From Ruditapes philippinarum (Eukaryota): DNA of 64,000 nucleotides. Shown here one piece after another: positions 13,959 through 46,300 of the stretch (the first letter of the stretch is position 1; every line of letters starts with the position of its first letter). The notes under the pieces are model-generated. The model searched no databases. It saw only the letters and a list, made by a program, of their open reading frames with translations, and was not told the DNA's origin. The stretch lies in contig NW_026863984.1 in assembly GCF_026571515.1 (NCBI RefSeq), positions 124,001 through 188,000 on the forward strand, written 5' to 3'. Both the position numbers and the translations under genes were made by a program.

Positions 13959-14097
13959 NNNNNNNNNNNNNNNNNNNNNNNNNNNNNNNNNNNNNNNNNN
14001 NNNNNNNNNNNNNNNNNNNNNNNNNNNNNNNNNNNNNNNNNNNNNNNNNNNNNNNNNNNNNNNNNNNNNNNNNNNNNNNNNNNNNNNNNNNNNNNNN
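13959..14097. other. Assembly gap (within putative intron 1 of gene A)
   Basis: Run of N flanked by (ATT)n. Confidence 1.
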
Positions 14098-16147: not shown

Positions 16148-19100
16148 ATGCGGTTTTGTATACTTGTCATAGCCCTATGTGGCATATACGCCACAGTTGA
16201 ATGCTTACCAAAGGCTGTATATGACAGCAAAAGCGATGGGAATCATCTAGATCTAATCAGGGAGATTGAAGACGCTTTGGAAGAGAGCAAGAGACACAAT
16301 CGTCCCGCTAACATCCACTCAAATCATGGCTCAGCCACAAGGGTAAACAGTAAGCAATCGAAAGCCATTCAACAAGACACGAATGATCCCCCATATGCCA
16401 ACGTCGAGAAGAGCTATATTGAAGTAGCAAGAAAAGTTGCGGATGCGTTCATGGAAGATAGAAAGACCAAGAGCCAAGGTTTGTAGAAATTATTATAAAT
16501 AAAATAAAAAAGTGTTGTTATAACAATCAATTAGTAATTTAGAAAGTGATGTTTTAACGTAAAAATAACAGGGAAATGTTTATTAACCATGTTATAAATT
16601 TGCTATAATGGGATTTTTGTATTGTCTTCATTTCCTATTCACATTTTACGGCTTCGAATGTCGAGATATTTTTCGATGATTTTAAAAATTCATTATAAAT
16701 AAAATACAGTCATGTTTTTATTCTTTTTTGTCACAATATATTCAATTGATTTTTAAGGTTGTACTGCTACGTTAACCAGTGCTTAATATTCAAGCGCTTT
16801 AAGTAAAATATCGAGGCGTTTGCGCATAATAAAACATGCCCTCAGCATTTTTTGTAGTGTCTTTAAAAACTGCATGACGGTCAATTTTTATGACATTTAC
16901 CAATTACCATTAACCAATTTAAAAATCATACAATTATTTGTTGTGCATATCTGGTCAATACAATGTATTTGGTAAAAAGATTTTGTCGCCTTAAATGTTT
17001 TGATCTTTGCTTACACCTACTTTAAAGTTGAATAAGTTAATGGTATCAACAAATTAATGATATCTTATTCCGAACATATTTATTAAATTTAATTGATATA
17101 GTGTCTCATTAAATTGTTAAAATTTATGGTGACTTGGGTTTGAAAACATTAGACCGATTGACCGCGACATTTTCTGATTATATTTGAAAGAATGAAAGCA
17201 AGTATTAAATGGAATGAGCAGGAGAAAGAAATATATCATAACGTATGAGTAACGTCGTAGACAGCTGTGTTGTTCATATCTGCACTATCAAAATTTAATA
17301 TGAAAGAAATTATTAAAGTGGCATTATGCACATTTAAGGGTAAACAGTGAGTGAGCAGATAAAAGACAAAATAAGTTTTTATATTGCCATAATTCCTTTC
17401 AGTTATAATTTGTCTGAAACGTTTAGTTTGTAAAAGGAGTAGGACAGTCTTTTGATATTTAAGACAGATTTTAAATGTTATCCAAAACATTTTCCAAAGT
17501 AAACTGTTGGTCAAACACCATTTTAACAGTCACTCTTTTGAAATAAAATGTCAATTCAGCTCATATTGACTATGAAAGTATGGACATAATGTCACTTTAA
17601 CTCTAATATTACTTGAACCATAGCATACGTCAACTTTGAGGTACGTTTGTGGGGAGACGATTGTTTTAATAATATTGTAATCAACTTTACTGTTCTTTTT
17701 GTCCCTTTACTATGATATTACAAGATTGTCCAGCTAGATGACGTTTTTGCTGTTTAGAAACTTACTTGAAAAGCTGGTACTTTAAGAATGAAGATATAAC
17801 TCGGCTAATACTTTTACTAAGTCAGCCTGATCCGTCTTATTAACCATTACTAGGCACAAAACAAAAGTAATAACATCCTCTGCAGTATATAATCAGTCGT
17901 TGCTGTAAATCCATGACGAGCTTCAAAATACCAAGCTGTCCCTAATATTGATAATGAACAGCTCATAGAACACACTTGATAAAAATTTAACAGGTTAAGT
18001 TTATGACCAACAAAACGTCAGTATTTGTTTCTTTTAAGGTTCTCATTTTGAAGGCCCCGGTACAGCTAGAGAGGCACTGCGTAGCTTTAATCGGCCGAGC
18101 TCAAAAATAAGAAAGCTTATAGAACAACAAGAAAAGAGAAATGCGGAGCTTGAAACCTTACTTTTGTTGTAAGTGTAGTGCATATAATATATACTATTCT
18201 TTATATCGATGTTGTTTCAGTAGAATATTATTCTTTATGGTACAATGATTTTATACTTATATTCACAAATTTTCAATCACATCGGCTTCCTGTGAAAATC
18301 AGTTTGAATTTAATTGCGCAGTTTCTTTCCCTGATCTATAATTTGTAGTATCTACAAACTCACATTAAAATGAGTGAAGATATTGTAAACAAAAAACGGA
18401 CGTGTAATGCAACAATATTCCGAAATAAAATGTTAAATATGAAGATGTTCATATAATTTTACGTTTACTTAAGATTTTATGATTTGATTTAGTGGCTATC
18501 ACATTATGCAAACACGATAGGCTTATGCAAACGTTTAATCAAATTGAGCCTGCACAATGTCATTTTTGCTGTTTAGAGCGTCCTGTAGGGATTTGGTGTA
18601 TTTTTCTGTTGTTATTTTTTTCTTCTGTTTGACAGCAATAACAATGTTGAGAAACTATGTTAACTTCAAATGAACATTACAATTTCCTTACAAGAAATTG
18701 TTTGCGTGTATTGTATCTGTCTTGAATTGGATTCGAACTTGCGACCTACAAGCAAGTACAAAGTCCTAAAAATAAAAATAAGTTGAAATTATCTTCCAAC
18801 TCGGAAACTTGGAAAAGTCACTATATGATTTTTTTCGCGAGAATTTGCAAATTAATTTTTTTTTGTGAGAAATTAGAAAAATATGTTTTATGAAATAAAG
18901 GGCCACTGGAGAAAATCAAGATCTTCTTAGAGAAGTAGACGTAGATCTTACTGCAAGAAATGCGCAAGCCGATCCGTCTTGTGACATAGCAGTTGACTGC
19001 AGCGCCATAACAAACAGAACTTTCGTTGACACCATTGAGTTTAGGAATATTGATGGAATTTGCAACAATCAAAATAATTATACTTGGGGAATGACTTACG

Positions 19101-22100
19101 TTCAACACCGACGATTGTTAGATGATACTTATAATGACGGTTTGTTTGCTATTTTAACACTTTAATTAGAATATCCAAAAAGTTTACAGCTTATGTGCTG
19201 TTTATCATTGGAAATCGCTTAATGGCAGCTTTGTGGCTTTCGTTTACTTAGACACCATACCCTCCTTTCATAGAATAATACTACTGTATCATATTGAAGG
19301 TTCCATGATAACCGCTGTATGAACACATCTGCGGATATTTCTTAATTAAAAATTTCACCATGTTCATGTTTAAATGTTGAATTCTGATCAAGTCGGTGAT
19401 CGAGTGCGCGGACGGTTACTTGCACATTCATGTACATTCCCTGAACACACTCAATCAAACCGAGCCTGTACAATTTTCAATTTTGTCGTTTTGAGCGTTC
19501 TTAAAAGTTATGTGTTCTCATTTTTATGGTGATGAGTGCCTCGTTCCGTGAACTTTGATTTTCCTTGTTGAACGCAAGGGGAACATGTTAAATGTATGAA
19601 GAATTACAAGTTTTCTCTGCTAAGTTAGTTTAAACACAATTCTGTACTTTCGCTAGATTTTGACGCAAACTTGAAATTTAATTTAAACTAGTCTCGAGTC
19701 CACCTCATGAACTTACCATTACTCGGATTATAACCATAATCATTTGGTTGGTTTTTAACCAGACACCTTAACCACTTGGCCACAGGTCCATTTCATCTAT
19801 GTCTGTTCATCTGTTATATTTTAACTAGTATTTAAGGTGACTCTCTGTGGCATAATATATTTTGTATACTAATTCGGCAATAATCACACCGCTACATATA
19901 TAGATTTATTCACAATTTTAAAAACGAAATCCAAATAAAACATGTCTTAATCGGTGAGAATATAAACTTTGATACAATAAGTTATATATCATTTAGTTAA
20001 TTCGAACATTTACTGAACAACAAATGTAATGATTATAGCATCTTCCATGTCTAAATTGCTATTTCCTTTTTTCTTCAGATAAATGGCATTTACGTCAATT
20101 TAGCGTTACAAGTACGAGAAGACCACGTAATGACGTACGTTTACCGTCTGCACGTCACATCAGCAATATCGTCCACAGCAGTACGACTCAACCAAAGCCG
20201 GACAACGACGATAACATTTCCCTGGCTTTATTCTATTTTATGCAGTTTATAGATCACGATTTGGCAAAAACTCCTGAAGGTACGACGCACTTTGTGTAAT
20301 TTTGTTCTTTGTTTGTTTATTTTTAAATTAGTAAGTTCGTTTGACATATTTTAAAATGCCTAAGTTCATTGACTTGTCGTTTGTTTGTCTAGTTTTACGC
20401 TGATTTGAACACATTTTGGGAAGTCAGTCCACCTTACCGGAATATCAAGATAGACAATAACTAAACGAGAATGTATTGATTTTTGGTAATCGGCTTATAA
20501 TCCAACATGATATTTGGCTCTAAAATAAAATTATCATTAAACTTCATGTCCCTGATTAATTGTCTTGGAGAAGTTTTGTAATTATGATCGAACCAGAGGC
20601 ACGTAAAATATGCAAGGCTGACGGACTTTCGTTGCAATCTGAATTGCGACCCTATGCAGTTTGGTACCGAAAGTGTCAATCACTTGGCTTGATACTTGTG
20701 CTTATTTTTTTCCTAAAAACTTTCCTCAAATAACATCCAAAATAACATTAAGTGATTGAAGACAAACATGATGGCATTACTATTAAAAGTAGCAAACAGT
20801 TTAGCACAAAACAATTATTTATTGCTATTTTGTAACTATAAAGGTGAAGTAGGAAACAACAGAATTTGCTGTGACGAAGACGTTGACAGACCAGGGTAAG
20901 TAATAGATTGAGAAAAAAAAACTTTGTAAGAGTCAGCCCAACATGCAAGAGCCTAGAAATGTTTAATGCTTAAGCATTGGACAATGTCATTAATTTGTAC
21001 ATACTGATTAATTAAGTTTGATTGTGTACGACGCTACATACTTAATTATACACTCTCAAATCTGTTCCTGGAAGCAACCGACAGTTAGCAATAAATGTCA
21101 ATGTTTTCGCTTTTGGAAACATTGGCTTGCCCCTGACGGAATTTGAACATACGCGGCCAGCAATTCTTAAAAATAATTTATACAATCTTTGGTTAATTAC
21201 TCGGGCAGCATGCCGCCACTTCAAAAAAATGTATAATCATGTTTTTTGTTGTTTATTTAAGCGGTTTCTGCCTTCCAATAAAAGCCGAGGTTGAAGAGAG
21301 TCATTTTGCATCGGATTATTGTATGGATGCGAGAAGGAGTTTTACCTTATTCCGTTGTAACGATGGTAAATAATGTTTTGCAAGTAAGGAAAAGAAAACA
21401 GAAAGAACAAAACAAAACTGATAAAAAATTAAATGAGAACTTATTGATTCTGCTGTTTTACTTTTTTCATAGAAGTAAAAGTGAAAATGAGCATAAATTG
21501 TATTGGGAATTGTACTTCAAGAGTGGCTTCATTGTAATAAATTAAAAAGAATGCGTAGCATTTATCCTTAACACAAATTGAGTAAAGGATAAAAAAATTC
21601 AACCATTATAAAAGATAGGATAAGAAGTATTTTCTAAAGATTTCTTTCCATTTGGCTATCGGGTCGTATTTATGCAACACTTTACAATCATAATAAATAA
21701 GAAAACTATAAAAAAAACCTACAAATTAAACAATACTTCTGTCATTTTACGTCCTCAACAATCAAACGATACAAAACAATACAAGTGAGGTGTAGAGAAA
21801 AATTATTTTCATGCTTTTTAGCCACACTGTTCCAGAATCAGATAAATGCAGTAACGTCATATCTTGACGCCAGCATGGTATATGGATCCACCTTAGAAGA
21901 GGAGGAAAGTTTAAGAACGTGGACAGGAGGTTAGCAATATTTGCGTATTTTGACAACATATGAAAACCGTAGTTATATGTATTGACCCATTGGATGCAAA
22001 CTGTTTTTTGTAATAAAATTAAACTGAGGCAAATCATATTTTTGTTAGATGCAAATTCTTCTACTGAACCCTATTTTGTACGCTTTAATTTTAAAATTAA

Positions 22101-25100
22101 AAAGAAAATTTGAAAAGTTATTAAAAAACGCTCAAACAGAGAACTTGAAGATGTTGGAATATGCCTGTTCATGGACGGTATTGTTAAATGCAAGCTACCA
22201 TACACGCCCCTAGCACTAGCTAAAGCAGTATTCGAGATTTATGTTTTGTGAACGATGCCTCGCCCTGTTTTCTCCTTTATTTACGTATTTTTTTTAAACC
22301 AAGGGAATTATGTCTTAATTTCTGCCACTTCTTCTGTTCTAAATATGTCCATACTTTACCTATTAACATTGATTCCTTATGAAAATTTACCTGAAGAAAA
22401 GTTTCAATAGTATTTGTCCCAACTGGTTTCGTCATTCAAATTTTTTGATGAAATTAATCAGTTTTGAAAGATATTGTAGAAAATGAAGACTTCAAACTAC
22501 ATGTATATCGGCAGGGCTATTAGCTCCTTTGTAGAGGCTAACTTGTTTATAAAATTCATTCACTACATGTATAGTTACGAATCGGTTGTTGTTGGTTTTT
22601 TTTAATTATTCTATTCTTTATTCATTTATTAATTAAATTTAATCGTCCAGTAATTTATTTATTTATCAGCTCTTATTTATGAATTTTTCTAGTTATTTAT
22701 TCATCTATTTATTGTTTTTTTCTTTATGTATTTATTTATGTATTTATTTATTTATTAATTTAAAGATTTTGCGCAAAAGTTACATTAGTAACCTATTGGT
22801 CTTCATTTTTGAATGTGTGCTTAATATTTTTTCAATTTTATTCTGCTGTAGTCTCAAAATGCCTATTTATCCATTTGTGTCACCTGTCATATTATGTTCC
22901 TATTTTAACTGAGATAATATTTGCAGGATGGTTATTAGAGAGCAGTAATAGATTCCTTCCAAATGCGTCAGATGCGTCTGATCTACCGTGTAATGTAACA
23001 GACCCGGACTATAGATATTGTTACAAAACAGGTAAAATGCTAAAATTTGGATGCTTGTCTTTTCTATTCACCTGTGAAATAATTAAAATTTCTCCGATAT
23101 TGTACACCATTGAAACAAATATAGCTTTCAGTATTGAAGTTAAGGTTTTGGTTCTTGAATAACACATATTTTTTATGATTATTACTGCTTTGATACCAGA
23201 CGTCCAGTTAACAATGACCCAGATTTATAGATTTTGTAAAGAAAGTCAGTTGTCGTTTAAAGGACGAGATGATGCCCTTTGATTTGTTTGTGTCGTACTA
23301 ATTGTATTCTTTCATTTTTAATAAATATTTTTATATATAAACATGTATAGGCTTTATGGTTATAGATAAATAAAGTTTACCTTAAAAAGGAACCAATACA
23401 TTGTTGCTATATCATTTAGTATTTGTCTTATTACATAGGTGACACAAGAGCAAACGTTCATCCAGGACTGACGAGTTATCATACAATATTTGTCCGGGAG
23501 CATAACCGTATTGCCACACTTCTTGCTGAAATAAGACCCGCATGGACTGATGAGAGAATTTACCAGGAGACGAGGAAAATAATAGGAGCACTTATACAAC
23601 GTATTGTTTATAAGTATGTAACATATTGAAAAGTAAGACAAATAAGAAAACCATGTGAGTCAATGTTAAAGATATACTACTGTAACCCAACGAATATTCG
23701 CGACCAATTAATATTCGCTTTATTCGCGGATGGCCACGAAGCGTGAATATTTGTTTGCGCGAATAAGTCCGCACAATTTCGCGAATAAATTGGAGAGAAT
23801 TTTTTATTTTAGACGTGGTTATGCAAAGCTACTTGACCGGATATATTCGAATTTTACGGGCACCTGCTAGGAAGTAATGAATTGTTATGAATATTGCCAT
23901 AAAGCAATAAAAACACAAACTAAGTAAACTACTACTATTTTAAAAATATCAAAAGAACTCTATGTCAACATAGCAATCAAAATAAACATCTACATTTTAA
24001 TACCGTTTATGAAATACTAGTAGACCTATTGTCAATCACGTTCCGTATAGGGTACTATACGGAGCATGTGTCAGTTTTAAAATTCTTCATATTTACACTT
24101 CTATACTAAGTAAATGCACACAATGTACTCGCAATTATTTTAAAATAAATGTTTGAATAAATCGTTTGACAATAGTGGGAAAACTATCGAGCATCACAAA
24201 AGGCTATTGTTTTTGGATCCTATAAAATAATTGTTTGCGTTAATTGTTAAGAAACCTATCGAGCATCACAAAAGGGTATTGGGTGTACATATTTACAAAC
24301 TGTGAAATACAAGATGGTTTCATACTAGTATCGAATTTCTTAAAGACTTTTCTAGATAAAATGAAGACGAACGTTGCGTACATGTACATATATAGAGAAA
24401 ATGTTTTGCTGAATTGTGATCACAATTCACTTACCAATACAATATAAGGCTAGCGTATTGTTAATCCCATTTAAGACACCAATAATGACCTCAATTATTG
24501 AAAATTTATAGTCGGCTAATGGATTTTACTGCCCCATCGGACTTTCCAATCCGCGAAATTTTTTTTTGGGGAAATCAAGAAAACGCGGAAATTAATATTC
24601 GCGAATATGTCCAACCTCGGCAAAATGCGAAAATTTGTATTCGCGAATATAAATTGGGTTACAGTATGCTCATCCTTGACTTAAATATTTTACTCAAAGA
24701 ACTTTTTTAAAGTCTATACAATTCTTACTGAACATAGCTATATTTTTTTTTAATAAACAACGAATAAACTATGTATGGGAAGCTGCGTTACTTGTTACAG
24801 TCCAAGTAAAGTTTGTATTTTCTTTAAAAACAGCTGCCAGTTATTTTATTGACACTATAAATTCATATTGTGACAGAGTTAAAAACATAACATATCTACT
24901 TTGTGTGGAGTAAAACATGTTTATTTTATATCTATAAAGAGACTGTGTAGCAGTTATAATTTCTTTCCAATATTTGATTTCAGCTTAGTATACTTTTATA
25001 CATTTGAGAATAACGAGTTAAATATAGAATCTGAAAGCAGTATTGATTTATAAGAAGGACCCACATTCAACTCTGAATGACAGTAATTACCTAGAAACAG

Positions 25101-28100
25101 AACTTAGTAAATCACCTTTGAAAACTAATTGAATATAAATTACTTAGGTGATGGAATATGTATACAACGTCTTCATATATTTATTACATGCATTAAATTT
25201 CAAAATCTGAAACATAATACCTTTTTTAAACTGTTAACTCGTTTCTTTCAGCGAGATGTTACCAGTACTTTTCCGTCAATCAGAGTTAGATTTGTATGGC
25301 GTTTCCAGTACTTACTCATACGATTCTTCCATCGATTCATCCATGACACAGGCGTTTTCAATGGCATATAGGTATATAATAGCATATACATATACAGTGT
25401 AACAATATGCATTGATAAGTGGTAATAAATTGTTTAAAGCCTGATAATGATATCCAATGAAAAAAGTGACTTAATAACATGCATTAGGAAAAACAATCAA
25501 TCGAATGCCCTTTCAGACACGAAGAAGTGAATGTCACAACTAAATTTGCCTGACACATGTAATAAAAAGTCATCTCACATTTTGCAACTAGTTGATAACT
25601 AAATTGTATAAAAATGGAAAAAAAGACATTTGTTTCAATAGATTCAATTAACTATTTGAACGCGGGCTTTGTGTCGGAATGCCCTTGAGACCATGGACTT
25701 GTTTACCGTCATTTTTTTCTTCATTTTTCCCCCCCATTTTTTAACTTTCCACTATCAATTGAGGGCATATCACGGTGAAAATATAAGGTTAGTCGACTGC
25801 TCAAATGCACGTCTATACAGGCTGGATTGGATCTAAACTAATGACAAAATCTAAAATCTATTTCCTTTTGGTTCAATAAGGATAAGAAATAAAGTTGTCT
25901 GACCAGTTTTTTACAGGTTTTAACAGCATTATATCAGATTGAATGATATATCTGACACTAACAATTGACTATTATATTTATAAAGTAAGACATGATCACA
26001 CTACACATATCATACCGCGGGATCACTTAAAAGTCTAGAAAAAGCGGGAACCCATCGGAAGCATAAATCACAACAAAATTACATGAAAAAATACAGACTC
26101 GGTTTGATAGAGTCTGTACATGAAAGATAATGACAAAGTGGAACATCCCTGAAGCCCCCTAGCACCGACTTAAGCGGTACTCAGTTTGCAACATTTAACA
26201 TTCGAACCAATTTAAAACATTTGTTATATATAATACAGTAAAAACAGACTAATAAAATTGCTTGCACGGTATCTACATAATTATTTTCAGAATTTGAAAG
26301 AAAAGGTAAAGCATGCGCTAATGGGCATGAACTGTGCTTAATCCATTTGAAATGTTTTCGGCTGTGATTATCCCCCGTTTCAATGTGATTTTCTAAGTTG
26401 TAATGTAATGTAGAAAATTAATTTCCATTTGTCCGATATATTCTCCCGAGAGGTGTCGCCAGTAGTATCATGCACGAGGTTTACGTATTTGACTGGGTAA
26501 ATTTTTTGCTCATTCAGTTTTTTCGCAGCCGGCTAAACATAAACATAATTTCGGGCAATACTTTGTTACATCTCATAATAGTTTTAAGTGGATTTTTATA
26601 TTAAGATCATTTCTGATATACGATATATGTTCATATATTCTTAAAGTTATTTAATAACGTATTCATTTATTATGAATGTATGTTTCTGAATCACGGGGGT
26701 TGAAGGGAAATATTATTGTTCTTTTCAAAAAATTAGGAAAAGGAAAATATAAACGTCCCCTCCACCCCGAAAAACTAATAAAATGCAAAATAAGGAAAGG
26801 AAAACAAGCAATTTTTTTTGTTTGAAGACATTATGTATCTTCATTATGAACGAATGAAAGGAGATATATACATATGGTTTCATCTGAAACATTTCGTCTA
26901 CAATATGTCAAGTTGAAATCAGAGACTCAAATGTATTTAGATGTAAATGGAAAATCGGCATACCGGTGAAATGATAGCCATAGCACATTGTATTTCTATT
27001 TTAAAATAGCTTCAAGTAGTATTCGACATTCATATGTTAATTTTACCATTTTAAGAAATTTTGACATAACATTTAACAGCTTATCACCACAAAACGAGCA
27101 TTCTGCTTCTACAGTGTTTCTTTTTACCAATCTTAATACCATAGATGTTGCCGCTTCACATGCCGAATGTATTATTAACTTTACCAGCTTCTTTTTGTTT
27201 TAATAGTGTTCATTACCAGTTTTGAGAATAGCGAAATGAAAATTCAAAATAAGTCAGCCAACAAAGATGTTTCCGTGTTTAATACTGTGTCAAAGGTAAA
27301 TAACTTCTAGTTATAGCAGATTCAAGGGCTACGTGATACATGACAGACTTTTGAAATGTTTCTTTATTTCCTTCTAAGATATCACAATCTGATGCCTGCA
27401 AAGTTGCATTTGGCTGAAGAATTGAGCTCTGAGGAGACACCAGTAGCAAATTTTGAAGAGGTTAACCAAGAGAACGTGTTTCAGAGACCACATTATCTTA
27501 TCAAGGACCATTATAAAGGAATCGACGAACTTGCTCTTGGATTTGTAAAAAGTGAATGCCCATATGTTAGTAGGTAAGACTCACTTTGTCATCACTTATC
27601 ATACATTAGAATGATCCATTATCGAATAATCACTAACTGTGTGCCCGTTTGTATAAAATTGTGCCGCTTCATTTTTTCTTTCATTTATTCTTGTTCTTAA
27701 TGGCCCTCCCGTTTAATGCAGTTTCAGATTACCTTGCAGCTTTCCCGACGTACCAGACGATGTCATGTATCATTTGAAATCTTTACATTTTAAATTTTTA
27801 TAACCTGATTTACAATAGCATATAATTATATTTTATCACATTTATATAATTTTATCATAAAGCCATATAATTGTATAAAGCAATCCATTTTAAAATTCAG
27901 AATAATGAATGATGCTTCCCGAAATCTTCTATTTTTGGATGAAAACGGAGACTCGTTCGATCTTGCTTCGTTGAACATCATGCGCGGTAGGGAATGGGGC
28001 ATGCCAACATATACGTCTTACCGCGAGTATTGCGGACTGGGAGCGGCAACGGCATGGAGTGATCTCTTAAGTACAACCGAACAAGAGGACATAGATAAGA

Positions 28101-31100
28101 TGTCATCAGTGTATGCGTAAGTGGTATATTCCTATTTTTGTCATTAATGGTTTTTTTGTATGTATGCATGTTTTTTTTCTTTGCTTTGGTTTGGTATGAA
28201 AACATCTGCGGAAGTTTCTAATTCAAAATTTTACTATTTCATGTTTAAATGTTGAATTCTGCTTAAGCCGGTGCTAGGGGTCGTGGACTGTAACTTGCAC
28301 TTTCCAGTACCGTCCATGAACAGGCTCAATCAAACCGAGCCTGCAACATGTTCAATTTTGCCGTGTTGGATTTTCTTAAGGGTTTCTGAATGTATCTATT
28401 TTGTTCGTGATAACTTAAAAAAGATACATTTGTGTGTGTTTGCAAACATGCTTTTCTTAGACAAGTACAACTAAAAATTTAATCAGCTTTTACTTTATAA
28501 TTGCGAAAAATGATTTGTGAATAGTTCAGTGTCGTTTTAGCCTTTCTAGTGTAAAAATCACAATTTGTTTCTTATGAGAACCCATAGCTTTTTTGTTAAA
28601 AGACAGACAGCTACATACAGGGCGAAACAAAGCATACGAAGTTTTTTGTAACGGATTCAAAATATTTTAATTCAGAAGTATTTCTGAAAAACTACTACAG
28701 TATATTTCTCTCTTCGGAAATTTAAATCTATGGTTCTGTATGCCTTTGTTTGTCAAATGAATTAAAGGTAAGAATTTGTTAGTTTAACATATTGGACTTA
28801 GTTTATTAAGTATAGCCATTAACGTGTTTAACTAAGAGACTCGTGACATATTTTTGCAGCGATGTACGTGACGTGGATCCGTGGACAGGATTTGTAACAG
28901 AAAAGAAGCTAACTGGCTCCATTTCGGGCCCGACGCAGACCTGTCTTGTAGCCAAACACTTTGCCAATTTAAAGCACGGGGACAGGTTCTGGTATGAAAA
29001 TGCTGAATTCGGTTTCACTGGTGGTAAGTGGCACGTTTTATTGCCGCCTTAATTAAACTAAACCTGAAAAATGTAAACTTTAAGGAAATTCAGATATGCA
29101 TACTACCTTCACTTAAAGTAGGTCAGAGCTTTGGATTTCACAGCTCCTAAAGGGATACCAGAGTTGAATATTTGACCTTAAGTAAAGAAATTGAAGAGAC
29201 CCACATAAATCTTAGCTCAGGTTAATAAAGTAAGTTAAATTGAATTGCAATTTGCATGTTTGTCCTTTAATTTAAAGTTTCATTTTTTTCTCTTTAACTT
29301 AAAGTGTTTCATAGCTTTTTCACTTTTGGCTAGTCAAAGCTTGATATTTATTAAACTAAAGGCCGTTCAAGTTGTTAATTATAACTTATGTACACTCACT
29401 GTCAGGATATTTAAAGCTTGATAACTAAAATGAAATGAGCCGCGTCATGACAAAACCAACATAGTGCGTCTGCGACCAGCATGGATCCAGACCAGCCTGC
29501 GCTTCAGCGCAGTCTGATCAGGATCCATGCTGTTCGCTTACAAACCCTATAACAAGTAGGGAAACTGATAGCGAACAGTATGGATCCTGGTCAGACTGTG
29601 CGGATGCGCAGGCTGGTCTGGATCCATGCTGGTCGCAAACCCATTATGTGGGTTTTTCATAACGCGGCTCAAATGAAGTTTTATTTCTCAGAATAACGAA
29701 AAGAATGATATAATTAAGAGTAAGCTTAACTAAAGAGTGATAAATCAGTGTATATCAAATCTTTTAGTTTAGTATCAAGTTAAGTTAACTATACAAACGT
29801 TTGTTTAGGGCGTACCATTTTGTATTAGCTTTGCGTAACGGATATTAACCTTTATATGTCGACTTACTTTTTGGCAATTTTTTAATAGCACTAGATAAAA
29901 GCTTTAAATTCCACTTTTATTTCAACGAGGATCAAATCTTTATATTTGATCTCTGATTAAAGATGTTATAACAAAGCCCTTATATTTCTAATAATAATAA
30001 TAATATAACTAATATTACATCTCATCCTTAAAGTATATTCTAAATAACATACATATATGTATAAAGATATTTTTATTACAGACAAGTTAGCACAAATACA
30101 GACCAAAACTTTGGCTAGAATCCTCTGTGACAACCTTGGCGTTACAAAGATGAGGTCAGAGGTGTTCCGGACGAATTCTGATTGGTATGGATCTTAATAA
30201 ACTGAAAATTATAATCCATTTGTTTAACAAATAGCATTACTTTTAATGAGCTAAACCGTTAAGTAAAGGTCGTATTTAAAATTCCATATGAGCCAAATCA
30301 CTGCTCAACATTTTAGATATTCCTTCAAGCTTCCTTAAAAATGTTTGAAACTGTTTTTATATTATGTTATACCCCCTGGCGTTCGGCCGTCCGTCTCTGT
30401 CTCTCCGTCCGTCCGTCCGTTAGCAATTTGGTTTCCGGAGCATAACTTAAGTTCCATTTGGCCCACAATATTCAAACTTCATAGGATGATTGTACATATT
30501 GGGTAGAAGACTCCTATTGATTTTGGGGTCACAAGGTCAAAGGTCAAGGTCACTATCGCCTTAAATATGAAAACAGTTTCCGGAGCATAACTTAAGTTTC
30601 ATTAGGCCCACAGTGTTCAAAATTCATAGGATGATTGTCCATATTGGGTAGAAGATCCCTATTGATTTTGGGGTCACAATGTCAAAGTTCAAGGACGCTA
30701 TTACCTCAAAACTGAAAACAGTTTCCAGAGCATAAATTAAGTTCCATTTGGCCCACACTATTCAAACTTTATAGGAGGATTGCTATTTGAAGGCGGTAAT
30801 TCTTTATTTAATTTATGTAATGTCTTACAAATGCTTCATCCTTAATAAAAAAAAGAAAAACACTTTCGGGCATATAATGCTCCGCCTAGCGGTGCACTTG
30901 TTATTACTTGTTATGGCTGGGGATTTATGTATAGGTATTAAAATATTAAGCTATACATTAACTATATTCCGCTGTTTCAATTGGTACTGTTAAACTGTAT
31001 TACTATCGTTGTCTTATAAATTTGATGTCGATTGTTATTCGATACTTGTTGATTAAGTCTAATTGCCACTTTAAAATTCTTTTTCAAACCGTCATATATA

Positions 31101-32178
31101 TTAATCTATTTAGTCCATATACTGAATAGATGAGTGTCATTGGCTTTTCAAAGTAAACGTCAAGTATTAAAGCCGTTAACGAAAACAGTATCTGAATGAT
31201 GGTTGTAGCGTCTCTAATTATGTACGTAACTTCTATGTATCATCAAAATTGTGAGTTTGAAAGCTAACTTTTAAAAAATAAATCATGTGTCATGACAAAA
31301 CCAACATAATGGGTTTGCGACCAGCATGGATCCAGACCAGCCTGCGCGTACGCGCAGTCTTATCAGGATCCATGCTGTTCGCTTACAAACCCTATAACAA
31401 GTAGAGAAACTGATCGCGAACAGCATGGGTCCAGGCCCGGCTTTCACTAACGTTCTCAAACTGAGATATATCTCAACTTAAGATTGTCTCGGTATTGACT
31501 GAGATTCTTACTCACCTGAGAAAAATCTCAAGTTGGCTTTCACTAAACTTTTTTTCAACATTTGAGAATTTTCTCAACTGAGACTGTTCTTTTTTTTCTC
31601 AAGACATAAGCGGCTATCTTAGTGAACATTGTTGATGGGTTTCTATGACTAAAACATAGCATAGTGTGTTCGTTTTTGTACGTGGTATATCATGTATATA
31701 TTAATATAGTTGCTGTTTTGATGTAAGATGACGCAACAGGGAAACGTTTTGTATATTTATTACATTAAGATCTATATTTTCTTGTTTTATTTAAAAAGAA
31801 CAACAACAACAAGAAACAATCAATGACAAAAAACAACAAAAAGCAATTGCAAATGTGTGAATATTTGATCGCTAATGAAAATGATTTATCAAGAATGAAT
31901 GTACATTAAAAGAAAACAAAATCTGAGCTGAGTTTTTTACTTTGAGAACGTTAGTGAAAGCCGGGCCTGATCAGACTGCGCAGATGTGCAGGCTGGTCTG
32001 GATCCATGCTTGTCGCAAACGCATTATGTTGGTTTTGTCATGACGTGGCTCAAATCATGTGTCATGCAACACGCATTTAATTAAACACAACATTCTTGAT
32101 TGATTTTTTTTTTTCAGGAAAAGCTGTGATGAGATACGTACGGCGACTGGCGGAGATTGGGACTTAAGCGGTTGGTAG
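16148..32178 (+). CDS. Secreted animal heme peroxidase (peroxidase-cyclooxygenase superfamily; chorion peroxidase/peroxinectin-like architecture), paralog A, 767 aa, with atypical YRYH proximal motif
   Basis: Manual GT-AG splicing gives an uninterrupted 2304-nt frame: join(16148-16478,18039-18168,18901-19139,20079-20279,20844-20895,21262-21365,21822-21929,22927-23031,23439-23613,25252-25371,27379-27573,27901-28116,28860-29023,30082-30184,32118-32178). Signal peptide MRFCILVIALCGIYATVEC. Family motifs: FRNIDGICNN..WG, LPSARHIS, QFIDHD (distal Gln/Asp/His), QINAVTSYLDASMVYGS (Ca2+ site), GDTRAN (distal Arg), FVREHNRIA, YQETRKIIGA, AYRYH (proximal His), DLASLNIMRGREWG, GDRFWYE, LARILCDN. Exon phases match paralog B. 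Confidence 0.93.
19320..19502 (+). repeat. ~180-bp dispersed intronic repeat, copy in gene A
   Basis: TGAACACATCTG...TGTTTAAATGTTGAATTCTG...CAATCAAACCGAGCCTG...TTCAATTTTGTCG..TTGAGCGTTCTT, homologous to 28197-28380 and 49686-49868. Confidence 0.75.
23680..24664. mobile_element. TA-flanked non-autonomous DNA transposon (Tc1/mariner-type MITE) in an intron of gene A
   Basis: TA|CTGTAACCCAA...TTGGGTTACAG|TA with multiple subterminal TATTCGCGAATA palindromes. Confidence 0.75.
28197..28380 (+). repeat. ~180-bp dispersed intronic repeat, second copy in gene A
   Basis: Colinear with 19320-19502 and 49686-49868. Confidence 0.75.
29437..29670. mobile_element. Palindromic MITE, copy 4 (intron of gene A), with 4-bp TSD AAAT
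   Basis: AAAT|GAGCCGCGTC...AACGCGGCTC|AAAT. GAG ends plus a 4-bp AWWT target suggest a Sola-type element (inference). Confidence 0.9.
30365..30902 (+). mobile_element. Helentron-associated interspersed element (HINE; pearl/CvA-like structure)
   Basis: 5' TATACCCCC, (GTCC)n microsatellite and ~145-bp tandem cores (GTTTCCGGAGCATAAC at 30431, ~30576, 30721; GGTCAAAGGTCAAGGTCA). The 3' end is GGGCATATAATGCTCCGCCTAGCGGTGCACTTGTT with a short hairpin. Confidence 0.7.
31289..32051. mobile_element. Palindromic MITE, copy 5, interrupted by a nested element
   Basis: MITE sequence runs 31289-31434 and resumes at 31967-32051. Confidence 0.85.
31435..31966. mobile_element. Non-autonomous PIF/Harbinger-like element nested in MITE copy 5
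   Basis: 26-bp perfect TIR GCCCGGCTTTCACTAACGTTCTCAAA. It is flanked by CAG (31432-31434) and CTG (31967-31969) at a site that reads CTG in uninterrupted MITE copies (CWG target). Confidence 0.75.
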
Positions 32179-40390: not shown

Positions 40391-43300
40391 ATGCGCTGTG
40401 TACTTTTCATTGTTTTGTGCGGCTTTTACGCCGGTATTGACTGCTTACCAAACACTGGAAGTGTCGACAACATAATGGATGAGAAATATCTAGATATTAT
40501 CAGGGAGATCGCAGAAGCCGTAGAAGAAAGTGAAAGGCAAAACGACCCACCGAACATTGATTCTAACCACGAAACATTCTCAAGAGGACGTGATGAAAGT
40601 AAACACGCGAAAGCAATTCAACAAAACACAAACGACCCTCCGTATACCGACACCGAGAAGAGCTACCTTGAAGTCGCTAGAGAAGTTGCTGACGCATACA
40701 TGATAGAAAAGAAGGAAGCAGAAGGTGATTAGAACTTATTTTTTTAAACTGTGGCTAAAATGTATAAAACAATTTTTTATGTATAAATATAACCTTTTAA
40801 AACTTGTACACAGATTTAAGTATGCGAATGAAATTGATAAAAAAATATCCAATATCCACAACACAATAACTAAGAATCGTGGTGCTAAAATGCTTATCAA
40901 CGTTTATAGTTTCTTCTCATAACGATACAAAACTGGTTAATCTAACAGTGATGCTCGGTGCTACAGTTAATGTGTGATTGTACCGTCTTAACCCGGGGTA
41001 CTAACACTCTTTTACAGTTAAAACTTTGTAAATTTATCAATAATAAACACAATGTTTTGGTAACTCTATTGTGAGCGGTAGAGTACCTTGAACTTTAACG
41101 ATAAAAAAAACGTTTGCTCCCCAGGATAAGATGAGAATTATATATTCCTAATGCATGAGAGTACTAAAAGTATTTTTGCAGATGAATAGACAAGAAGTAT
41201 ATGTAAACAATAATTATCATAACCTTTTTCTCAATTAGCATTTTCTGCTAACCAGACTTTTAAGCAGATACTATCACCCGAGACAAAAGCTTTTCTAGCA
41301 GATGATCCATGTACATTTTGCAACAAGGCACTGGTCTCCTCATTGGCACTGTTGTCTGTCTTCTTTATGCGGTTTTGTTTTGTTTGCTTTGGGAACATTA
41401 ATTTGTTAAGAACTCATCCGATGTGAGATGTATTCATTAAAGCTGCCTTACCTGTCAAATATTATCTACGTTAAAGAGTCCGACGTAGCAGGCTCTGGCT
41501 CAGCTGTAGCTGCACTACGTAGCTTCAATCGTCCAAGCGCAAGAATTAGACAGCTTTTAGATGAACAGGCTAGAGAAGAGGCAGAATTAGAGACCTTAAG
41601 TTTACTGTAAGTAGGATAAAATAAAGTGAATATTCAAAATGAATATTATCTTATGATCTTAAAGGAACTCTACTGTTACACTTAGTTTTTGTAAGACTTT
41701 AAGATCTTTTGTTTCATGCCTTTTGACATCAATAAAGCTCCTTACAGTCTTTGATTATTTTAAACGTGTTTTAAGGCATGTGTGATTATACCTTAAATGA
41801 CGCATAACGATTGATAATTTAGCTGTATTCGAGCTTTGCATGTATACAAATAGAACTTTACCCACAGGCGAAAGTAGCATGATTATTTTGTATTTTTTTA
41901 TCAATGTCAATCATACATAAGCCATATCAAGATCTAAATTATTTTGAAGAATGATTATAAACAGTGTACTTTTTAAGTTCGATGTAAATTATTCCAAAAC
42001 ACTAACTTGTATATAAACTGCTGCTTCAATAACTAAAGGCAAGGATGTCGTTGACTAACACTAACTCAATAGATTCTTTAAATGTTCAAAAACTCAGACA
42101 TTCACGATTACTTCAGGCAAAAATTCTTAAGCACGGTTCAACACATGCATGGTATGTGTTTGTAATAAAATTAATAAAAACGTTATTAATCGAGGTAATA
42201 TTTATTACATTAATAGCTATTCTGACGGTGATAAAAAATGAACTGAAAAACTATACCTTACATTCTACATAAATCTGATTATTCTTTTTCATCAACGGCA
42301 GAGTTGCTGGTGAAGACTCAGATTTGCTAAGAGAAGTCAACGTTCGATTGACTGCAGGAAGTGCAAAGGACGATCCGTCGTGCGGTATTACTATTGACTG
42401 CAGTAAGGCGGACAATAGAACTTTTGTAGACAACATTGAGTTTAGAACCATAGATGGCATATGCAATAATCGGAACAATTATACATGGGGAATGACATAT
42501 GTTCAACACCGGAGATTATTACCAGATACCTATCACAATGGTTTGTATATCACTTTATCAATGTTTAAATCACGCCTTGTAAACAACAGAGAAACTTTTT
42601 TTCTGTATACGATAAAGCGCTCTATCGCTACTTTCGACCTAATGCTCGTCGGTTACTTTAAGCGTTAGCATAGGTAAAATGACATCTTATTTTATCACAT
42701 TTATAATAAGGCATTACTATACTTTATTGGCGGGAAAGAATGTCACGCGTATCTATCTTATTATTTAATGCAGCTTGCTTCTATTGTCAAATTTTTGCAT
42801 AAAAAGTCGATAATGTATGCGTACTTGTGATATTCTATGCATGACAATATTTTAAATTCAAATATTTCTAACATCTTAACCAAATTATTGTTTTCTTGAA
42901 TGTCTTAATAATGCCAACAAATATGGTTGTAATATGTTACTATATGAGCTGCGTCATGACAAAACCAACATAATAATATTGTAAGTGAAATCTTATCCGC
43001 GCCGTCTGATCAGGATCCATGCTGTTCGCTTACAAACCCTATAACAAGTAGAGAAACTGATAACGAACAGCATGGATCCTGATCATACTGTGCGGATAAA
43101 ATTTCACTTACAATAGGCGAAACTTAAATCTTAATACTGCTATATAAAAGAGACAAGATATTCTGTATCTAAAATATGCGTTCTTGTATCATGTTAAATG
43201 CCTTCGACGTGGATATCACAGTGATATGATTCAATGAAAACTACATCTTGTTTAAGGAAACAGTACATAAACTCTGTGTGTAAACGTACGTTGTGTCAAT

Positions 43301-46300
43301 ATTGAACATTTCCCTTCTTTTTGCACTTATCATAACAGTTTCAAATAATTCCCTAAAATACATTGATATGTATTAATCCCTAGTGAATTCAGGAGAACAA
43401 TGACTACCAAATTCAGAGGTCATATTCTTACTAATACTACCTATACCCGTGCATGTTAAGCACTTGTGTTGAAAACAGCAGCAAATTCTATATTTTAATT
43501 CGTAACAATTTCTAACATTCCCTTTGCTTCTTTTCCAGGAAAATGGCATTTACGTCAATTAAGCGTTACTAGTACGAGACGCCCACGTAATGACGTACGT
43601 TTACCGTCTGCACGTAACATCAGCAATGTCGTCCACAGCAGTACGACTCAACCAAAGCCGGACAACGACGATAACATTTCCCTTGCTATATTTTATTTCA
43701 TGCAGTTTATAGATCACGATTTGGCAAAAACTCCCGAAGGTTTGTAATTAATATTGGAAATTCTATATGCGTATTAAGTTTTAACAGGCTTAATCAAACC
43801 GATCCTGCAAAATTTCAATTTTTCCCGTTTTTGGCATTCATTAAGTTCCATTTTTCTCTATTTAACAAAGTGAATGTCTATCGATATGCTGTATTTGAAA
43901 AAAACATCATCTGAAAATTAATGATTATGTAGACAATCTTTTTTTTAAGGCGGGTGGGGGTGAGGGTGCAAAGGTTGATAAAAAGGATTTGTGTAATTAC
44001 TTTATAACAATCCACGTTAATTGTTATATGTCTGTAAGTTATAAACATGCTATGAGATCCTGTTTACAGTATATGGGAACACGGTTCTCTGCAAAAAACC
44101 AATTTAAACAACCAAAAGATAACTAACCAATTACAAAAGCGTTACAAAGCATGCTTACAATTAACCACACTATTTTCACATTACAGGTCACGTGTCTTCA
44201 AAAAGAGATTGTTGCAAGGAAAACGTAGACAGGCCAAGGTGAATTGTAGATTTTAATTTGCAATTTCAATAAGAAACAGAACAAACCTGATTTTAATTCT
44301 TTTATAAAATCTTCGAACAAAAAATTTGCTGTAATATATATATTAAATGACTGGTCTCTGCATCTGTTACAGCACCATACGCTGACATTAAGTATCTATC
44401 TTATACAGAAAACCTTAATTAGTCTTCGCACTTATGTCATTATTGTAATATTCGGCTAATCATCTCGGTCAAACAAATTCCCTTACCCAGTATGGCGTCC
44501 TATAATTTAACAAATCTGCAAAAAAGTTAAAGCAAACATCACACAAAGCTATATTACCAATATTGTATGATATAATCATATTTTTTCTTTCTTCATATAT
44601 TTTCATATTATACCAAATGTCTGGGCAATACCGAACATACAAATGGCGTTCAAACAAAAACATATTTGCAATAATTCATTTCAATGCTATAATAAACTGA
44701 AAGGTAACAATACTGCATATTCTGATGTGGGATTATATGATTTGTTATTTTAGATTATTTTGTATGCCTATTAAAGCGGAGGTTGCAGAGAGTCATTTTA
44801 AAACGGATTATTGTATGGATTCGAGGAGAAGTTTCACCTTATTCCGTTGTAACGACAGTAAGTATATATTTAGATTTCAACTATTTTGTTGCTGTTATGC
44901 AGATGAACATTTTTATTTTGTTTGACAATTATGCGAAGTAAAGCAAAGTACAAAAATTGATCATAGATTTGTCGCATGCACAATTTACTTGGCTGTTCAG
45001 AGTTCTTGATATTGGAGAAAAGGTTTCATTTTTAAAAAAGTATCCACATTTGTTTGGAAATCAATACAAACGCCATTGTCACAATTGTTCGAGGTATTTA
45101 ATGTTTAAACACATGTTAAAGGCATGCATATGTCCCAATGTTATTGAACCCCTAATATCGCAAGAGAATTAACCGTTCGTGCTGTTGGAAAATACTCTGC
45201 AGTATTTGACACTCGGTCAGTACTTATTATAAAATTTAAAAATTTGCCCTAAAAATTGATAAGATTTTTTGTCATGATTGGTAAATGATCAAGTCCATAG
45301 AAGATATTTAACGTGATGAAGCTAAATAAAGAATATTACTTTAAAGAAACATTTGAGCCGCGTCATGACAAAACCAACATAATGCGTTTGCGACCAGCAT
45401 GGATCCAGACCAGCCTGCGCATCCGCACAGTCTGATCAGAATCCATGCAGCTCGCTTTCAGTTTCTCTACTTGTAAAACGGTTGGTAAGCGAACAGCATG
45501 GATCCTGATCAGACTGCGCGGATGCGCAGGCTGGTCTGGATCCATGCTGTCACAAAGCCATTATGTTGGTTTTGTCGTGACGCGGCTCATTAAGTCTATA
45601 ATGGAGGGCCTGTTATAGAACATATACAATGAATAATTACTCTGATGATATTTGACATAATTTAAAACGCGACAGAATTATACATTGAAGTTGTTGAAAA
45701 GTCTAAAAAATATGATGGGATAGTTCATGTATTAATATAGCGGATAATAAATTTTTATAGAACAAAATATTATCATTTATCATATAAATGTTCATTCTAC
45801 GTACAACACTTAGAATTGAATCGTCAATTTTTCAAGCAACAATTCATAATGATTTCCAAAGGATTCTACTGTATTTTTTATTAATATTTAAACTAATTAT
45901 GAAAAATGTGAGCATTGTGGACCTATCCACTGTAATGAACTTTTCTAGAAAGTGGGTTCCAGAACCAGATAAATGAGATTACGTCTTATCTTGATGCAAG
46001 TATGGTTTATGGATCTACGGTGGCTGAGGAGAAGCAGCTCAGAACTGGAATTGGTGGTAAGTCCTGTTTTTATTGCCTCGGCTACCTGGATGGGGGAATA
46101 TAAGATCTGCTCTTGTCCGTCGGTCCCGGTATCTTGCTGATACTTATCATAAAGTAAAATGTTGTGATGGATCTGTGCCAGCTTGTCCCTAGATGTTGAG
46201 ACATTTGCACAAGCAAACTGTTTGTACGCATATGCGAACATTTGAGGCAAATTCTAATTAATCGATTCTATTACACATAAAATATTTGCAAATTTGTTGT

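What the first reader, a model, noticed from the sequence alone, without database searches (positions are those of the whole stretch)
25361..27400. Secreted peroxidase with a cyclooxygenase/dioxygenase-type proximal motif (AYRYHxLMP): candidate tyrosyl-radical enzyme
Seen: splicing 25252-25371 to 27379-27573 gives ...AFSMA-Y521-R-Y-H524-NLMP (Tyr codon 25367-25369, His codon 27383-27385). Paralog B independently gives A-Y522-R-Y-H525-QLMP (49407-49409, 50615-50617), so this is not a sequencing error. Y and H are adjacent within one exon, so the usual Gly before the His is truly absent. Established: MPO/LPO/peroxidasin-type enzymes have A-F-R-(F/Y)-G-H. The fatty-acid dioxygenase branches have a catalytic Tyr at His-3: COX Y385-H-W-H388-P-L-M-P, plant alpha-dioxygenase YRMH, fungal linoleate diol synthase YRWH. 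Inference: a signal-peptide-bearing, disulfide-rich animal peroxidase scaffold with a Ca2+ motif has acquired (one-residue deletion plus Tyr) or retained the radical-Tyr geometry. It may oxygenate fatty acids (extracellular oxylipin or prostanoid synthesis) or drive radical cross-linking. Caveat: I cannot identify equivalents of COX Arg120/Ser530, the COX EGF and membrane-binding domains, or the alpha-DOX carboxylate-binding His/Arg.
Basis: partly seen in the sequence, partly recalled or inferred. Interest (0 to 1): 0.9.

Follow-up and report, generated by a model that had tools for sequence, protein, structure and literature searches.

The report
Bivalve haem peroxidases missing one glycine
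The window holds two expressed, tandem clam genes for secreted myeloperoxidase-type haem peroxidases that have lost the glycine before the iron-binding histidine; the resulting Tyr-Arg-Tyr-His motif looks like cyclooxygenase, but relatives swap that tyrosine for phenylalanine, so a cyclooxygenase-like radical enzyme is unlikely.

Summary
Gene A (16148-32178) and gene B (40391-57122) each have 15 exons. Each reads A-Y-R-Y-H-(N/Q)-L-M-P across a phase-2 intron inside the Arg codon.

Canonical peroxidase paralogs in the same genome share that intron, and their next exon begins x-G-H. So one Gly codon is truly missing inside exon 11.

An intron-free public contig protein (P0137) matches gene A exons 8-15 with exactly one residue at each junction. 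No micro-exon exists.

Two more copies exist: C on the same contig (CYRYH) and D on another contig (AYRFH). Relatives occur in Mercenaria, Mactra and Dreissena.

The cyclooxygenase reading is mostly not supported:
- **Branch:** sequence and predicted fold are myeloperoxidase/lactoperoxidase-like, far from COX and alpha-dioxygenase.
- **Origin:** the Gly-less clade arose once, nested among canonical bivalve peroxidases, so the spacing is derived, not retained.
- **The Tyr is ordinary:** it is the usual Phe/Tyr site of A-A-[FY]-R-[FY]-G-H.
- **The Tyr is not conserved:** it switched Y/F at least four times, and the earliest-branching, intron-free (so presumably transcribed) member has Phe at both sites.

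Most likely this is a lineage-specific secreted peroxidase with a remodelled proximal pocket and at most one (Asp) haem ester link. Interest is modest.

The parts
16148..32178 (+). Gene A, a 15-exon secreted haem peroxidase of about 767 aa. Exons: 16148-16478, 18039-18168, 18901-19139, 20079-20279, 20844-20895, 21262-21365, 21822-21929, 22927-23031, 23439-23613, 25252-25371, 27379-27573, 27901-28116, 28860-29023, 30082-30184, 32118-32178.
   Evidence: All introns are GT-AG and the frame is consistent. Pfam PF03098 was found exon by exon. Junctions of exons 8-15 are confirmed by the transcript-derived protein P0137. Junctions of exons 1-7 are inferred from orthologs P0004 and P0014.
40391..57122 (+). 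Gene B, the tandem paralog, about 768 aa. Exons: 40391-40724, 41477-41606, 42302-42540, 43539-43739, 44187-44238, 44754-44857, 45949-46056, 47082-47186, 47589-47763, 49292-49411, 50611-50805, 52268-52483, 53020-53183, 53760-53862, 57062-57122.
   Evidence: Exon-by-exon tblastn against gene A. AG/GT flanks and exon lengths equal those of A. An N run at 52595-52860 lies in intron 12 and was left untouched.
25252..25371 (+). Gene A exon 10. It ends ...A-F-S-M-A-Y plus the first two bases of the Arg codon. The Tyr at His-3 is coded at 25367-25369.
27379..27573 (+). Gene A exon 11. It begins with the last base of the Arg codon, then Y-H-N-L-M-P. The proximal His codon is at 27383-27385, and no Gly codon lies between Arg and His.
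49292..49411 (+). Gene B exon 10. The Tyr at His-3 is coded at 49407-49409.
50611..50805 (+). Gene B exon 11, starting (R)-Y-H-Q-L-M-P. The His codon is at 50615-50617.
20079..20279 (+). Gene A exon 4 with the distal motif F-M-Q-F-I-D-H-D. The distal Gln, the haem-linking Asp and the distal His are kept. Met replaces the canonical Gly of W-G-Q-F.
23439..23613 (+). Gene A exon 9 with G-D-T-R-A-N-V-H-P-G-L. The catalytic Arg is kept, the MPO Glu242 position is Val, and the Met243 position is His.
21822..21929 (+). Gene A exon 7 with the Ca2+-site motif T-S-Y-L-D-A-S-M-V-Y-G-S.
27901..28116 (+). Gene A exon 12 with L-N-I-M-R-G-R-E-W-G. The Asn partner of the proximal His is kept. The clade-specific His to Trp change turns the canonical R-G-R-D-H-G into R-G-R-E-W-G.

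Best explanation
Genes A and B belong to a clade of secreted, Ca2+-binding, myeloperoxidase-fold haem peroxidases. So do copy C further down the contig and copy D on another contig. I found the clade only in a few bivalve genera (Mercenaria, Mactra, Dreissena) and in unnamed transcript-like contigs.

On the stem of this clade one Gly codon was deleted inside the exon that carries the proximal His. The canonical A-[FY]-R-[FY]-G-H became A-[FY]-R-[FY]-H. The same stem also carries H to W in R-G-R-D-H-G. A G to M change in W-G-Q-F is seen in all members but the earliest-branching one.

Shown: the enzymes keep every residue needed for peroxidase chemistry. These are the distal His and Gln, the catalytic Arg, the proximal His with its Asn partner, and the Ca2+ site. 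They lack the haem-linking Glu, as many other bivalve peroxidases do.

Inferred: they most likely use H2O2 to oxidise small extracellular substrates such as phenolics, protein tyrosines or halides, with at most one (Asp) ester link to the haem. The Tyr at His-3 is the ordinary aromatic packing residue of the proximal helix, not a radical site.
For: - Branch: Pfam PF03098 on 8 of 10 exon translations at or above the 25-bit gathering cut-off. PDB sequence search of ortholog P0004 gives MPO 8.6e-69 and LPO about 1e-61, against alpha-DOX 5.5e-18 and COX-1 7e-18.
- Fold: AF2 model of ortholog P0014 has pLDDT 87.5. Foldseek TM-score normalised by target length is 0.85-0.89 to MPO/LPO, 0.67-0.69 to alpha-DOX and 0.62-0.63 to COX-2.
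- Origin: in the trees the Gly-less clade has 100/100 support and a single change of Gly state. It is nested with 99/98 support beside canonical Potamilus and Dreissena A[FY]RMGH enzymes, with bacterial and other animal G-H enzymes outside.
- The Tyr site: His-3 is Tyr in 9 and Phe in 5 of the 14 clade rows in the tree, with at least 4 changes. Basal P0136 reads AFRFHN. Canonical enzymes often have Tyr at the homologous site.
- Selection: dN/dS of A versus B is 0.18.
- Spliced product: the intron-free contig protein P0137 matches gene A.
- Catalytic motifs were read directly.
Against: No activity, haem-binding or tissue data exist for any member. The proximal His sits one residue closer to the conserved Arg than in every characterised peroxidase of this branch, so haem geometry and reactivity could be altered in unforeseen ways. 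All four copies in this genome do carry Tyr at His-3. In the AF2 model Y-R-Y is non-helical, whereas the canonical sister model has a continuous helix. The models contain no haem and I could not inspect coordinates.
Confidence: 0.7

Rival explanations
1. The Gly deletion re-registers the proximal helix so that the Tyr at His-3 takes the place of COX Tyr385 or alpha-DOX Tyr379. Compound I oxidises it to a radical, which abstracts hydrogen from a fatty acid (extracellular oxylipin or prostanoid synthesis).
For: The Y-R-x-H spacing is identical to alpha-DOX. The papers give Y379/H382 for rice alpha-DOX and Y385/H388 for COX (PMC8720084, PMC13049297). All four copies in this genome carry the Tyr. 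Insect peroxinectin-type peroxidases (Pxt) are reported to make PGH2 (PMC6375067), so the branch is not barred from such chemistry.
Against: - The Tyr is not conserved in the clade: at least 4 Y/F switches, and the basal member, from an intron-free contig, has Phe at both sites. True dioxygenases keep it invariant.
- The state is derived, not ancestral.
- The overall fold and sequence are MPO-like.
- Full-length orthologs carry PF03098 only, with no EGF or membrane-binding module. The N-terminal region is a charged helical stretch.
- The AF2 model breaks the helix at Y-R-Y.
- Molluscs are reported to have ordinary COX genes (PMC4420034).
Confidence: 0.07
2. The proteins are catalytically weak or inactive haem proteins that act through binding, as described for peroxinectins: cell adhesion, opsonin-like or matrix roles. 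The proximal-pocket changes would reflect relaxed catalytic constraint.
For: The haem-linking Glu is lost and the proximal motif is altered. Some Dreissena members also replace the haem-linking Asp by Ser or Thr. Peroxinectins are described as adhesion proteins (PMC4420034).
Against: The distal His, Gln and Arg, the proximal His and Asn, and the Ca2+ site are all conserved across the clade. The paralogs are under purifying selection. I did not look for an integrin-binding KGD/RGD motif.
Confidence: 0.15
3. The motif is an annotation, assembly or splicing artefact, for example a missed micro-exon or a wrong acceptor.
For: The motif spans an intron, and exon 11 alone has no Pfam hit at E <= 0.1.
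Against: The intron position and phase are conserved with canonical paralogs. Three tandem copies and a fourth elsewhere agree. The intron-free transcript-derived P0137 is identical across the junction. Other intron-free contigs and NCBI models from three genera agree. The introns hold no conserved island.
Confidence: 0.01

Closest known systems
Canonical bivalve 'peroxidase-like' enzymes of the R-x-N-V type (for example Dreissena P0028 A-Y-R-M-G-H, Potamilus P0041, Crassostrea P0045)
   Same: Same MPO-like domain, same exon/intron layout at the proximal motif, same loss of the haem-linking Glu (R-x-N-V), and same G-H-x-x-I-P tail with Pro at His+4. The nearest sisters even share an earlier one-residue deletion in the same helix.
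   Different: They keep the Gly before the His, His in R-G-R-D-H-G and Gly in W-G-Q-F. Their AF2 model has a continuous helix through the motif.
Myeloperoxidase, lactoperoxidase and eosinophil peroxidase (solved structures)
   Same: Best sequence and fold matches. The distal Q-x-x-D-H, the catalytic Arg, the proximal His-Asn pair and the Ca2+ site are shared.
   Different: About 30% identity. No Glu ester link (Val), no Met sulfonium link (His), the proximal His one residue closer to the Arg, and a long charged helical N-terminal region.
Cyclooxygenases, plant and cyanobacterial alpha-dioxygenases, and fungal linoleate dioxygenases
   Same: Same superfamily (PF03098) and the same Tyr-x-x-His spacing.
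   Different: Distant in sequence (E about 1e-17 against 1e-68) and in fold (TM 0.62-0.69 against 0.85-0.89). No EGF, membrane-binding or base domain. The Tyr is not invariant in the clade. The spacing arose secondarily.
Insect Pxt / peroxinectin reported as a COX-like PGH2 producer
   Same: A peroxinectin-branch haem peroxidase proposed to oxygenate arachidonate (PMC6375067).
   Different: I did not examine Pxt sequences. The arthropod peroxidases in my set have the canonical G-H motif, except one barnacle model.

Membership tests
Animal haem peroxidase, MPO/peroxinectin branch (PF03098) | Pfam An_peroxidase match above the gathering score | tested here: met
   Exon by exon: 94.8, 65.0, 60.4, 38.5, 34.8 and 29.6 bits against a cut-off of 25. 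Orthologs carry PF03098.
Animal haem peroxidase, MPO/peroxinectin branch (PF03098) | Distal Gln-x-x-Asp-His and catalytic Arg (G-D-x-R) | tested here: met
   F-M-Q-F-I-D-H-D and G-D-T-R-A-N in A and B, conserved in the clade.
Animal haem peroxidase, MPO/peroxinectin branch (PF03098) | Haem-linking Glu (R-x-x-E) | tested here: not met
   R-A-N-V-H in A, B and C. Val is shared with many bivalve canonical enzymes.
Animal haem peroxidase, MPO/peroxinectin branch (PF03098) | Proximal motif A-[FY]-R-[FY]-G-H with Gly before the His | tested here: not met
   The His is present but the Gly is absent. All of the roughly 100 other homologs with a recognisable motif, bacterial ones included, keep G-H, except one barnacle model.
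Animal haem peroxidase, MPO/peroxinectin branch (PF03098) | Asn partner of the proximal His and the Ca2+ site (D-H-D plus T-x-x-x-D-x-S) | tested here: met
   L-N-I-M-R-G-R and T-S-Y-L-D-A-S.
Animal haem peroxidase, MPO/peroxinectin branch (PF03098) | MPO-like fold | tested here: met
   Ortholog P0014 model gives TM 0.85-0.89 to MPO/LPO. The window's own spliced protein was not folded.
Fatty-acid dioxygenases (COX / alpha-DOX / LDS branch) | Tyr three residues before the proximal His | tested here: met
   Present in A, B, C and D.
Fatty-acid dioxygenases (COX / alpha-DOX / LDS branch) | That Tyr is invariant among relatives | tested here: not met
   Phe in 5 of the 14 clade rows in the tree, with at least 4 switches, and the basal member has F/F. 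The invariance in true DOX enzymes is taken from PMC13049297 and PMC8720084.
Fatty-acid dioxygenases (COX / alpha-DOX / LDS branch) | Closer in sequence, fold and descent to COX/alpha-DOX than to MPO-type enzymes | tested here: not met
   No COX or alpha-DOX sequence could be put in the trees.
Fatty-acid dioxygenases (COX / alpha-DOX / LDS branch) | EGF plus membrane-binding domain (COX) or base domain (alpha-DOX) | tested here: not met
   Full-length orthologs carry PF03098 only. The N-terminus is a signal peptide followed by charged helices.
Fatty-acid dioxygenases (COX / alpha-DOX / LDS branch) | Substrate channel residues (COX Arg120, Tyr348, Ser530; alpha-DOX His311, Arg559) and a cavity next to the Tyr | not testable with these tools
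   Model coordinates and residue-level structural alignments are not returned by the tools.

The most novel reading that the evidence does not exclude
In the Tyr-bearing members, which include all four copies in this genome, the loss of the Gly puts a Tyr at the COX Tyr385 / alpha-DOX Tyr379 position on an MPO scaffold. That Tyr would then support radical chemistry, either fatty-acid oxygenation or protein cross-linking. This would be a convergent re-invention of the cyclooxygenase radical site in a secreted peroxidase.
Probability: 0.07. Interest if true: 0.85.

Novelty: new variant of a known kind. Interest (0 to 1): 0.3.

Why it matters
The A-[FY]-R-[FY]-G-H proximal motif is kept almost without exception from bacteria to vertebrates in the MPO-type branch. 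A clade under purifying selection, with a spliced product on record, that has removed the Gly is a natural experiment on how the position of the proximal His tunes haem reactivity. The clade has also changed a nearly invariant His to Trp on the neighbouring helix and has lost the Glu ester link. It also shows that the COX/alpha-DOX-like Y-R-x-H spacing can arise secondarily, which warns against inferring radical chemistry from that motif alone. The practical value is modest: a defined, small gene family for biochemical study in clams.

Tried and rejected
I infer that they are transcripts only because the coding sequence is uninterrupted on contigs far shorter than the genes.
- The joined (spliced) protein of the window was never sent to any search, fold or alignment tool. 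All searches used single exons by reference or database proteins. In one script the exon coordinates were concatenated only to count length, frame and stops; nothing joined was printed or saved.
- Micro-exon and alternative splice sites: rejected.
- 'Retention of an ancestral COX-like state': rejected by the trees.
- Alternative alignment (G to H plus H to N, as HMMER drew it for P0004, which has H-H): rejected. The window genes have a single His, and the gapless tail with Pro at His+4 fits a Gly deletion.
- Residue-level superposition on COX, alpha-DOX and MPO: not possible, because no coordinates are returned.
- Presence of a bona fide COX gene in this genome: not tested, because I had no COX sequence by reference.
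- A word search of earlier notes of this scan found nothing relevant.
Full report
**What is in the window**

The window is G000:C12471:124001-188000 of a 1.41-Gb, AT-rich genome. On the + strand lie two tandem genes of the animal haem peroxidase family. Pfam PF03098 was found exon by exon, with scores up to 94.8 bits against a cut-off of 25.

- Gene A spans 16148-32178 and gene B spans 40391-57122.
- Each has 15 exons, all with GT-AG introns and matching exon lengths.
- Each begins with a hydrophobic signal-peptide-like N-terminus. This is read by eye; no predictor was run.
- A third copy, C, lies about 30 kb downstream on the same contig (L018).
- A fourth copy, D, lies on contig C9243.

- In A, exon 10 ends GCA TAT AG|gt at 25371 and exon 11 starts ag|A TAT CAC AAT CTG ATG CCT at 27379. 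This gives A-Y-R-Y-H-N-L-M-P.
- B gives A-Y-R-Y-H-Q-L-M-P at 49411/50611.
- C gives C-Y-R-Y-H-N-L-M-P and D gives A-Y-R-F-H-N-L-M-P.

Three lines of evidence show that this is not a splicing artefact.

1. Canonical peroxidase paralogs of the same genome have the same phase-2 intron inside the Arg codon, and their next exon begins x-G-H. Examples are AAYR|MGHSWI, AAFR|FGHSQI, R|MGHTWIP and R|VGHTWIP. One Gly codon is therefore missing within exon 11, four to six bases after the acceptor.
2. The introns of A, B and C share no collinear conserved island that could be a micro-exon.
3. A second protein search returned P0137. It is 376 aa, from the Logan source, on a contig of at most 1313 nt.
   - The whole-codon peptides of gene A exons 8-15 map onto it in order.
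   - 365 of 371 residues are identical, and exactly one residue (the split codon) lies between successive exons.
   - Exon 10 maps to residues 92-130, then R131, and exon 11 maps to residues 132-195.
   - An uninterrupted coding sequence on a 1.3-kb contig, for a gene that spreads over 9 kb here, can only come from spliced RNA. No processed copy exists in the assembly.

**What the proteins are**

The following features are kept:

- the distal motif F-M-Q-F-I-D-H-D, with Gln, the haem-linking Asp and the distal His;
- the catalytic Arg in G-D-T-R-A-N;
- the Ca2+ motif T-S-Y-L-D-A-S-M-V-Y-G-S;
- the Asn partner of the proximal His in L-N-I-M-R-G-R.

The MPO Glu242 position is Val and the Met243 position is His. 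Val at that site is common in other bivalve peroxidases.

A and B differ at dS 0.89 with dN/dS 0.18 over 559 codons, so both are under purifying selection.

**Relatives**

A profile of exon 11 from A, B and C was scored against 1.84 billion representative proteins. It found only 13 proteins. The full-length ones and their close kin are:

- predicted proteins of Mercenaria mercenaria, Mactra antiquata and Dreissena polymorpha, annotated as 'peroxidasin homolog pxn-2-like', 'peroxidase mlt-7-like' and similar names;
- several intron-free Logan contigs.

All of them read [AGV]-[YF]-R-[YF]-H-[NH]-[LM]-M-P. About 100 further homologs, from bacteria to vertebrates, read A-A-[FYLM]-R-[FYMVIL]-G-H. 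Tyr at the first aromatic site is frequent among them. The single exception is a barnacle gene model reading AAFRLHS.

**Which branch**

- By sequence against solved structures, ortholog P0004 hits MPO at 8.6e-69, LPO at about 1e-61 and Dictyostelium peroxidase A at 3.5e-47. Alpha-dioxygenase scores 5.5e-18 and COX-1 scores 7e-18.
- An AlphaFold2 model of ortholog P0014 has pLDDT 87.5. It superposes on MPO/LPO at TM 0.85-0.89 (normalised by target length), on alpha-DOX at 0.67-0.69 and on COX-2 at 0.62-0.63.
- In a 54-sequence tree rooted on bacterial enzymes, the Gly-less sequences form one clade (support 100 in both trees), and so too in a careful 27-sequence tree.
- That clade is nested with 97-99 support beside canonical Potamilus and Dreissena enzymes that read A-[FY]-R-M-G-H.
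- Loss of the Gly needs a single change.
- MAFFT also shows that these sisters share an earlier one-residue deletion in the same helix.
- Gene A, represented by P0137, groups with Mercenaria P0004/P0014 and Mactra P0012 (99/98).

The COX/alpha-DOX-like spacing is therefore derived, not retained.

**Is the Tyr special?**

- It occupies the ordinary Phe/Tyr site of the canonical motif.
- Downstream, H-N-L-M-P lines up without gaps with the canonical bivalve H-S-[LQ]-I-P. The only real difference is the missing Gly.
- Within the clade the His-3 residue is Tyr in 9 and Phe in 5 of the 14 tree sequences, with at least four changes.
- The recent Mactra paralogs read AYRFH and AFRYH.
- The earliest-branching member, P0136, comes from an intron-free 2.8-kb contig. 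It reads AFRFHN, with no Tyr at His-3 or His-1.
- In COX, fungal dioxygenases and alpha-dioxygenases the catalytic Tyr is reported as invariant (PMC13049297, PMC8720084).
- In the P0014 model the helix ends before Y-R-Y and resumes at the His. In a model of the canonical sister P0028 the helix runs unbroken through A-Y-R-M-G-H-S-W. This suggests that the deletion is absorbed locally and does not rotate the whole helix.
- That last point is weak evidence: the models have no haem and I could not see coordinates.

**Other changes fixed on the same stem**

- His to Trp in the nearly invariant R-G-R-D-H-G.
- Gly to Met in W-G-Q-F, in all members but the basal P0136.

Together with the shifted Arg, these changes point to a remodelled proximal and propionate environment. 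That is an inference.

**Verdict**

The sequence observation is correct and is now supported at the transcript level. The best reading (about 0.7) is a lineage-specific secreted haem peroxidase clade with a derived one-residue deletion next to the proximal His.

The tyrosyl-radical dioxygenase idea is not excluded for the Tyr-bearing members. Insect peroxinectins are claimed to make PGH2 (PMC6375067). It nevertheless loses its main support, which was a special and conserved Tyr, and I put it near 0.07.

The splice-artefact rival is refuted. An adhesion-type, weakly catalytic protein remains possible (about 0.15).

The proteins are already in public databases as generic peroxidase predictions. 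In the limited literature searches I ran I found no description of the Gly-less motif.

Noticed in passing
L018:3934-8215 (G000:C12471:~216900-221200) and L024/L014 (G000:C9243:~305900-310300, minus strand): Two further members of the Gly-less clade lie outside the window. Copy C reads CYRYHNLMP and is tandem with A and B. Copy D reads AYR|FHNLMP and has G-D-K-R-S-N-I-H.
   Followed up: partly
window 29465-29659, 31310-31447, 42960-43079, 45383-45505, 60092-60214, 62169-62291: A high-copy interspersed repeat recurs in the introns and flanks of both genes. Its open frames translate to near-identical peptides (...DQHGSRPACA.AQSDQDPCCSL...).
   Followed up: no
P0082 (Amphibalanus amphitrite gene model): This is the only other Gly-less proximal motif (AAFRLHS) among about 130 homologs. 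It sits in an arthropod clade, so it is either an independent loss or a gene-model error.
   Followed up: no
P0018, P0008, P0021 (Dreissena members of the clade): The haem-linking Asp of Q-F-I-D-H-D is replaced by Ser or Thr. These copies may have no covalent haem link at all.
   Followed up: no
P0136 (Logan contig, 692 aa): The earliest-branching clade member combines the Gly-less AFRFHN and R-G-R-E-W-G with a canonical W-G-Q-F distal motif. This suggests an order of events: the proximal changes came first.
   Followed up: partly
window 52595-52860 (also 1010-1137 and 13959-14097): N runs. The first lies in intron 12 of gene B and affects no exon. They were left as they are.
   Followed up: no
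G000:C8420:351110-353593 (L002): A peroxidase copy has most of the domain in one 514-codon open frame and a canonical AAMRFGHS motif, unlike the many-exon layout of the other paralogs.
   Followed up: no
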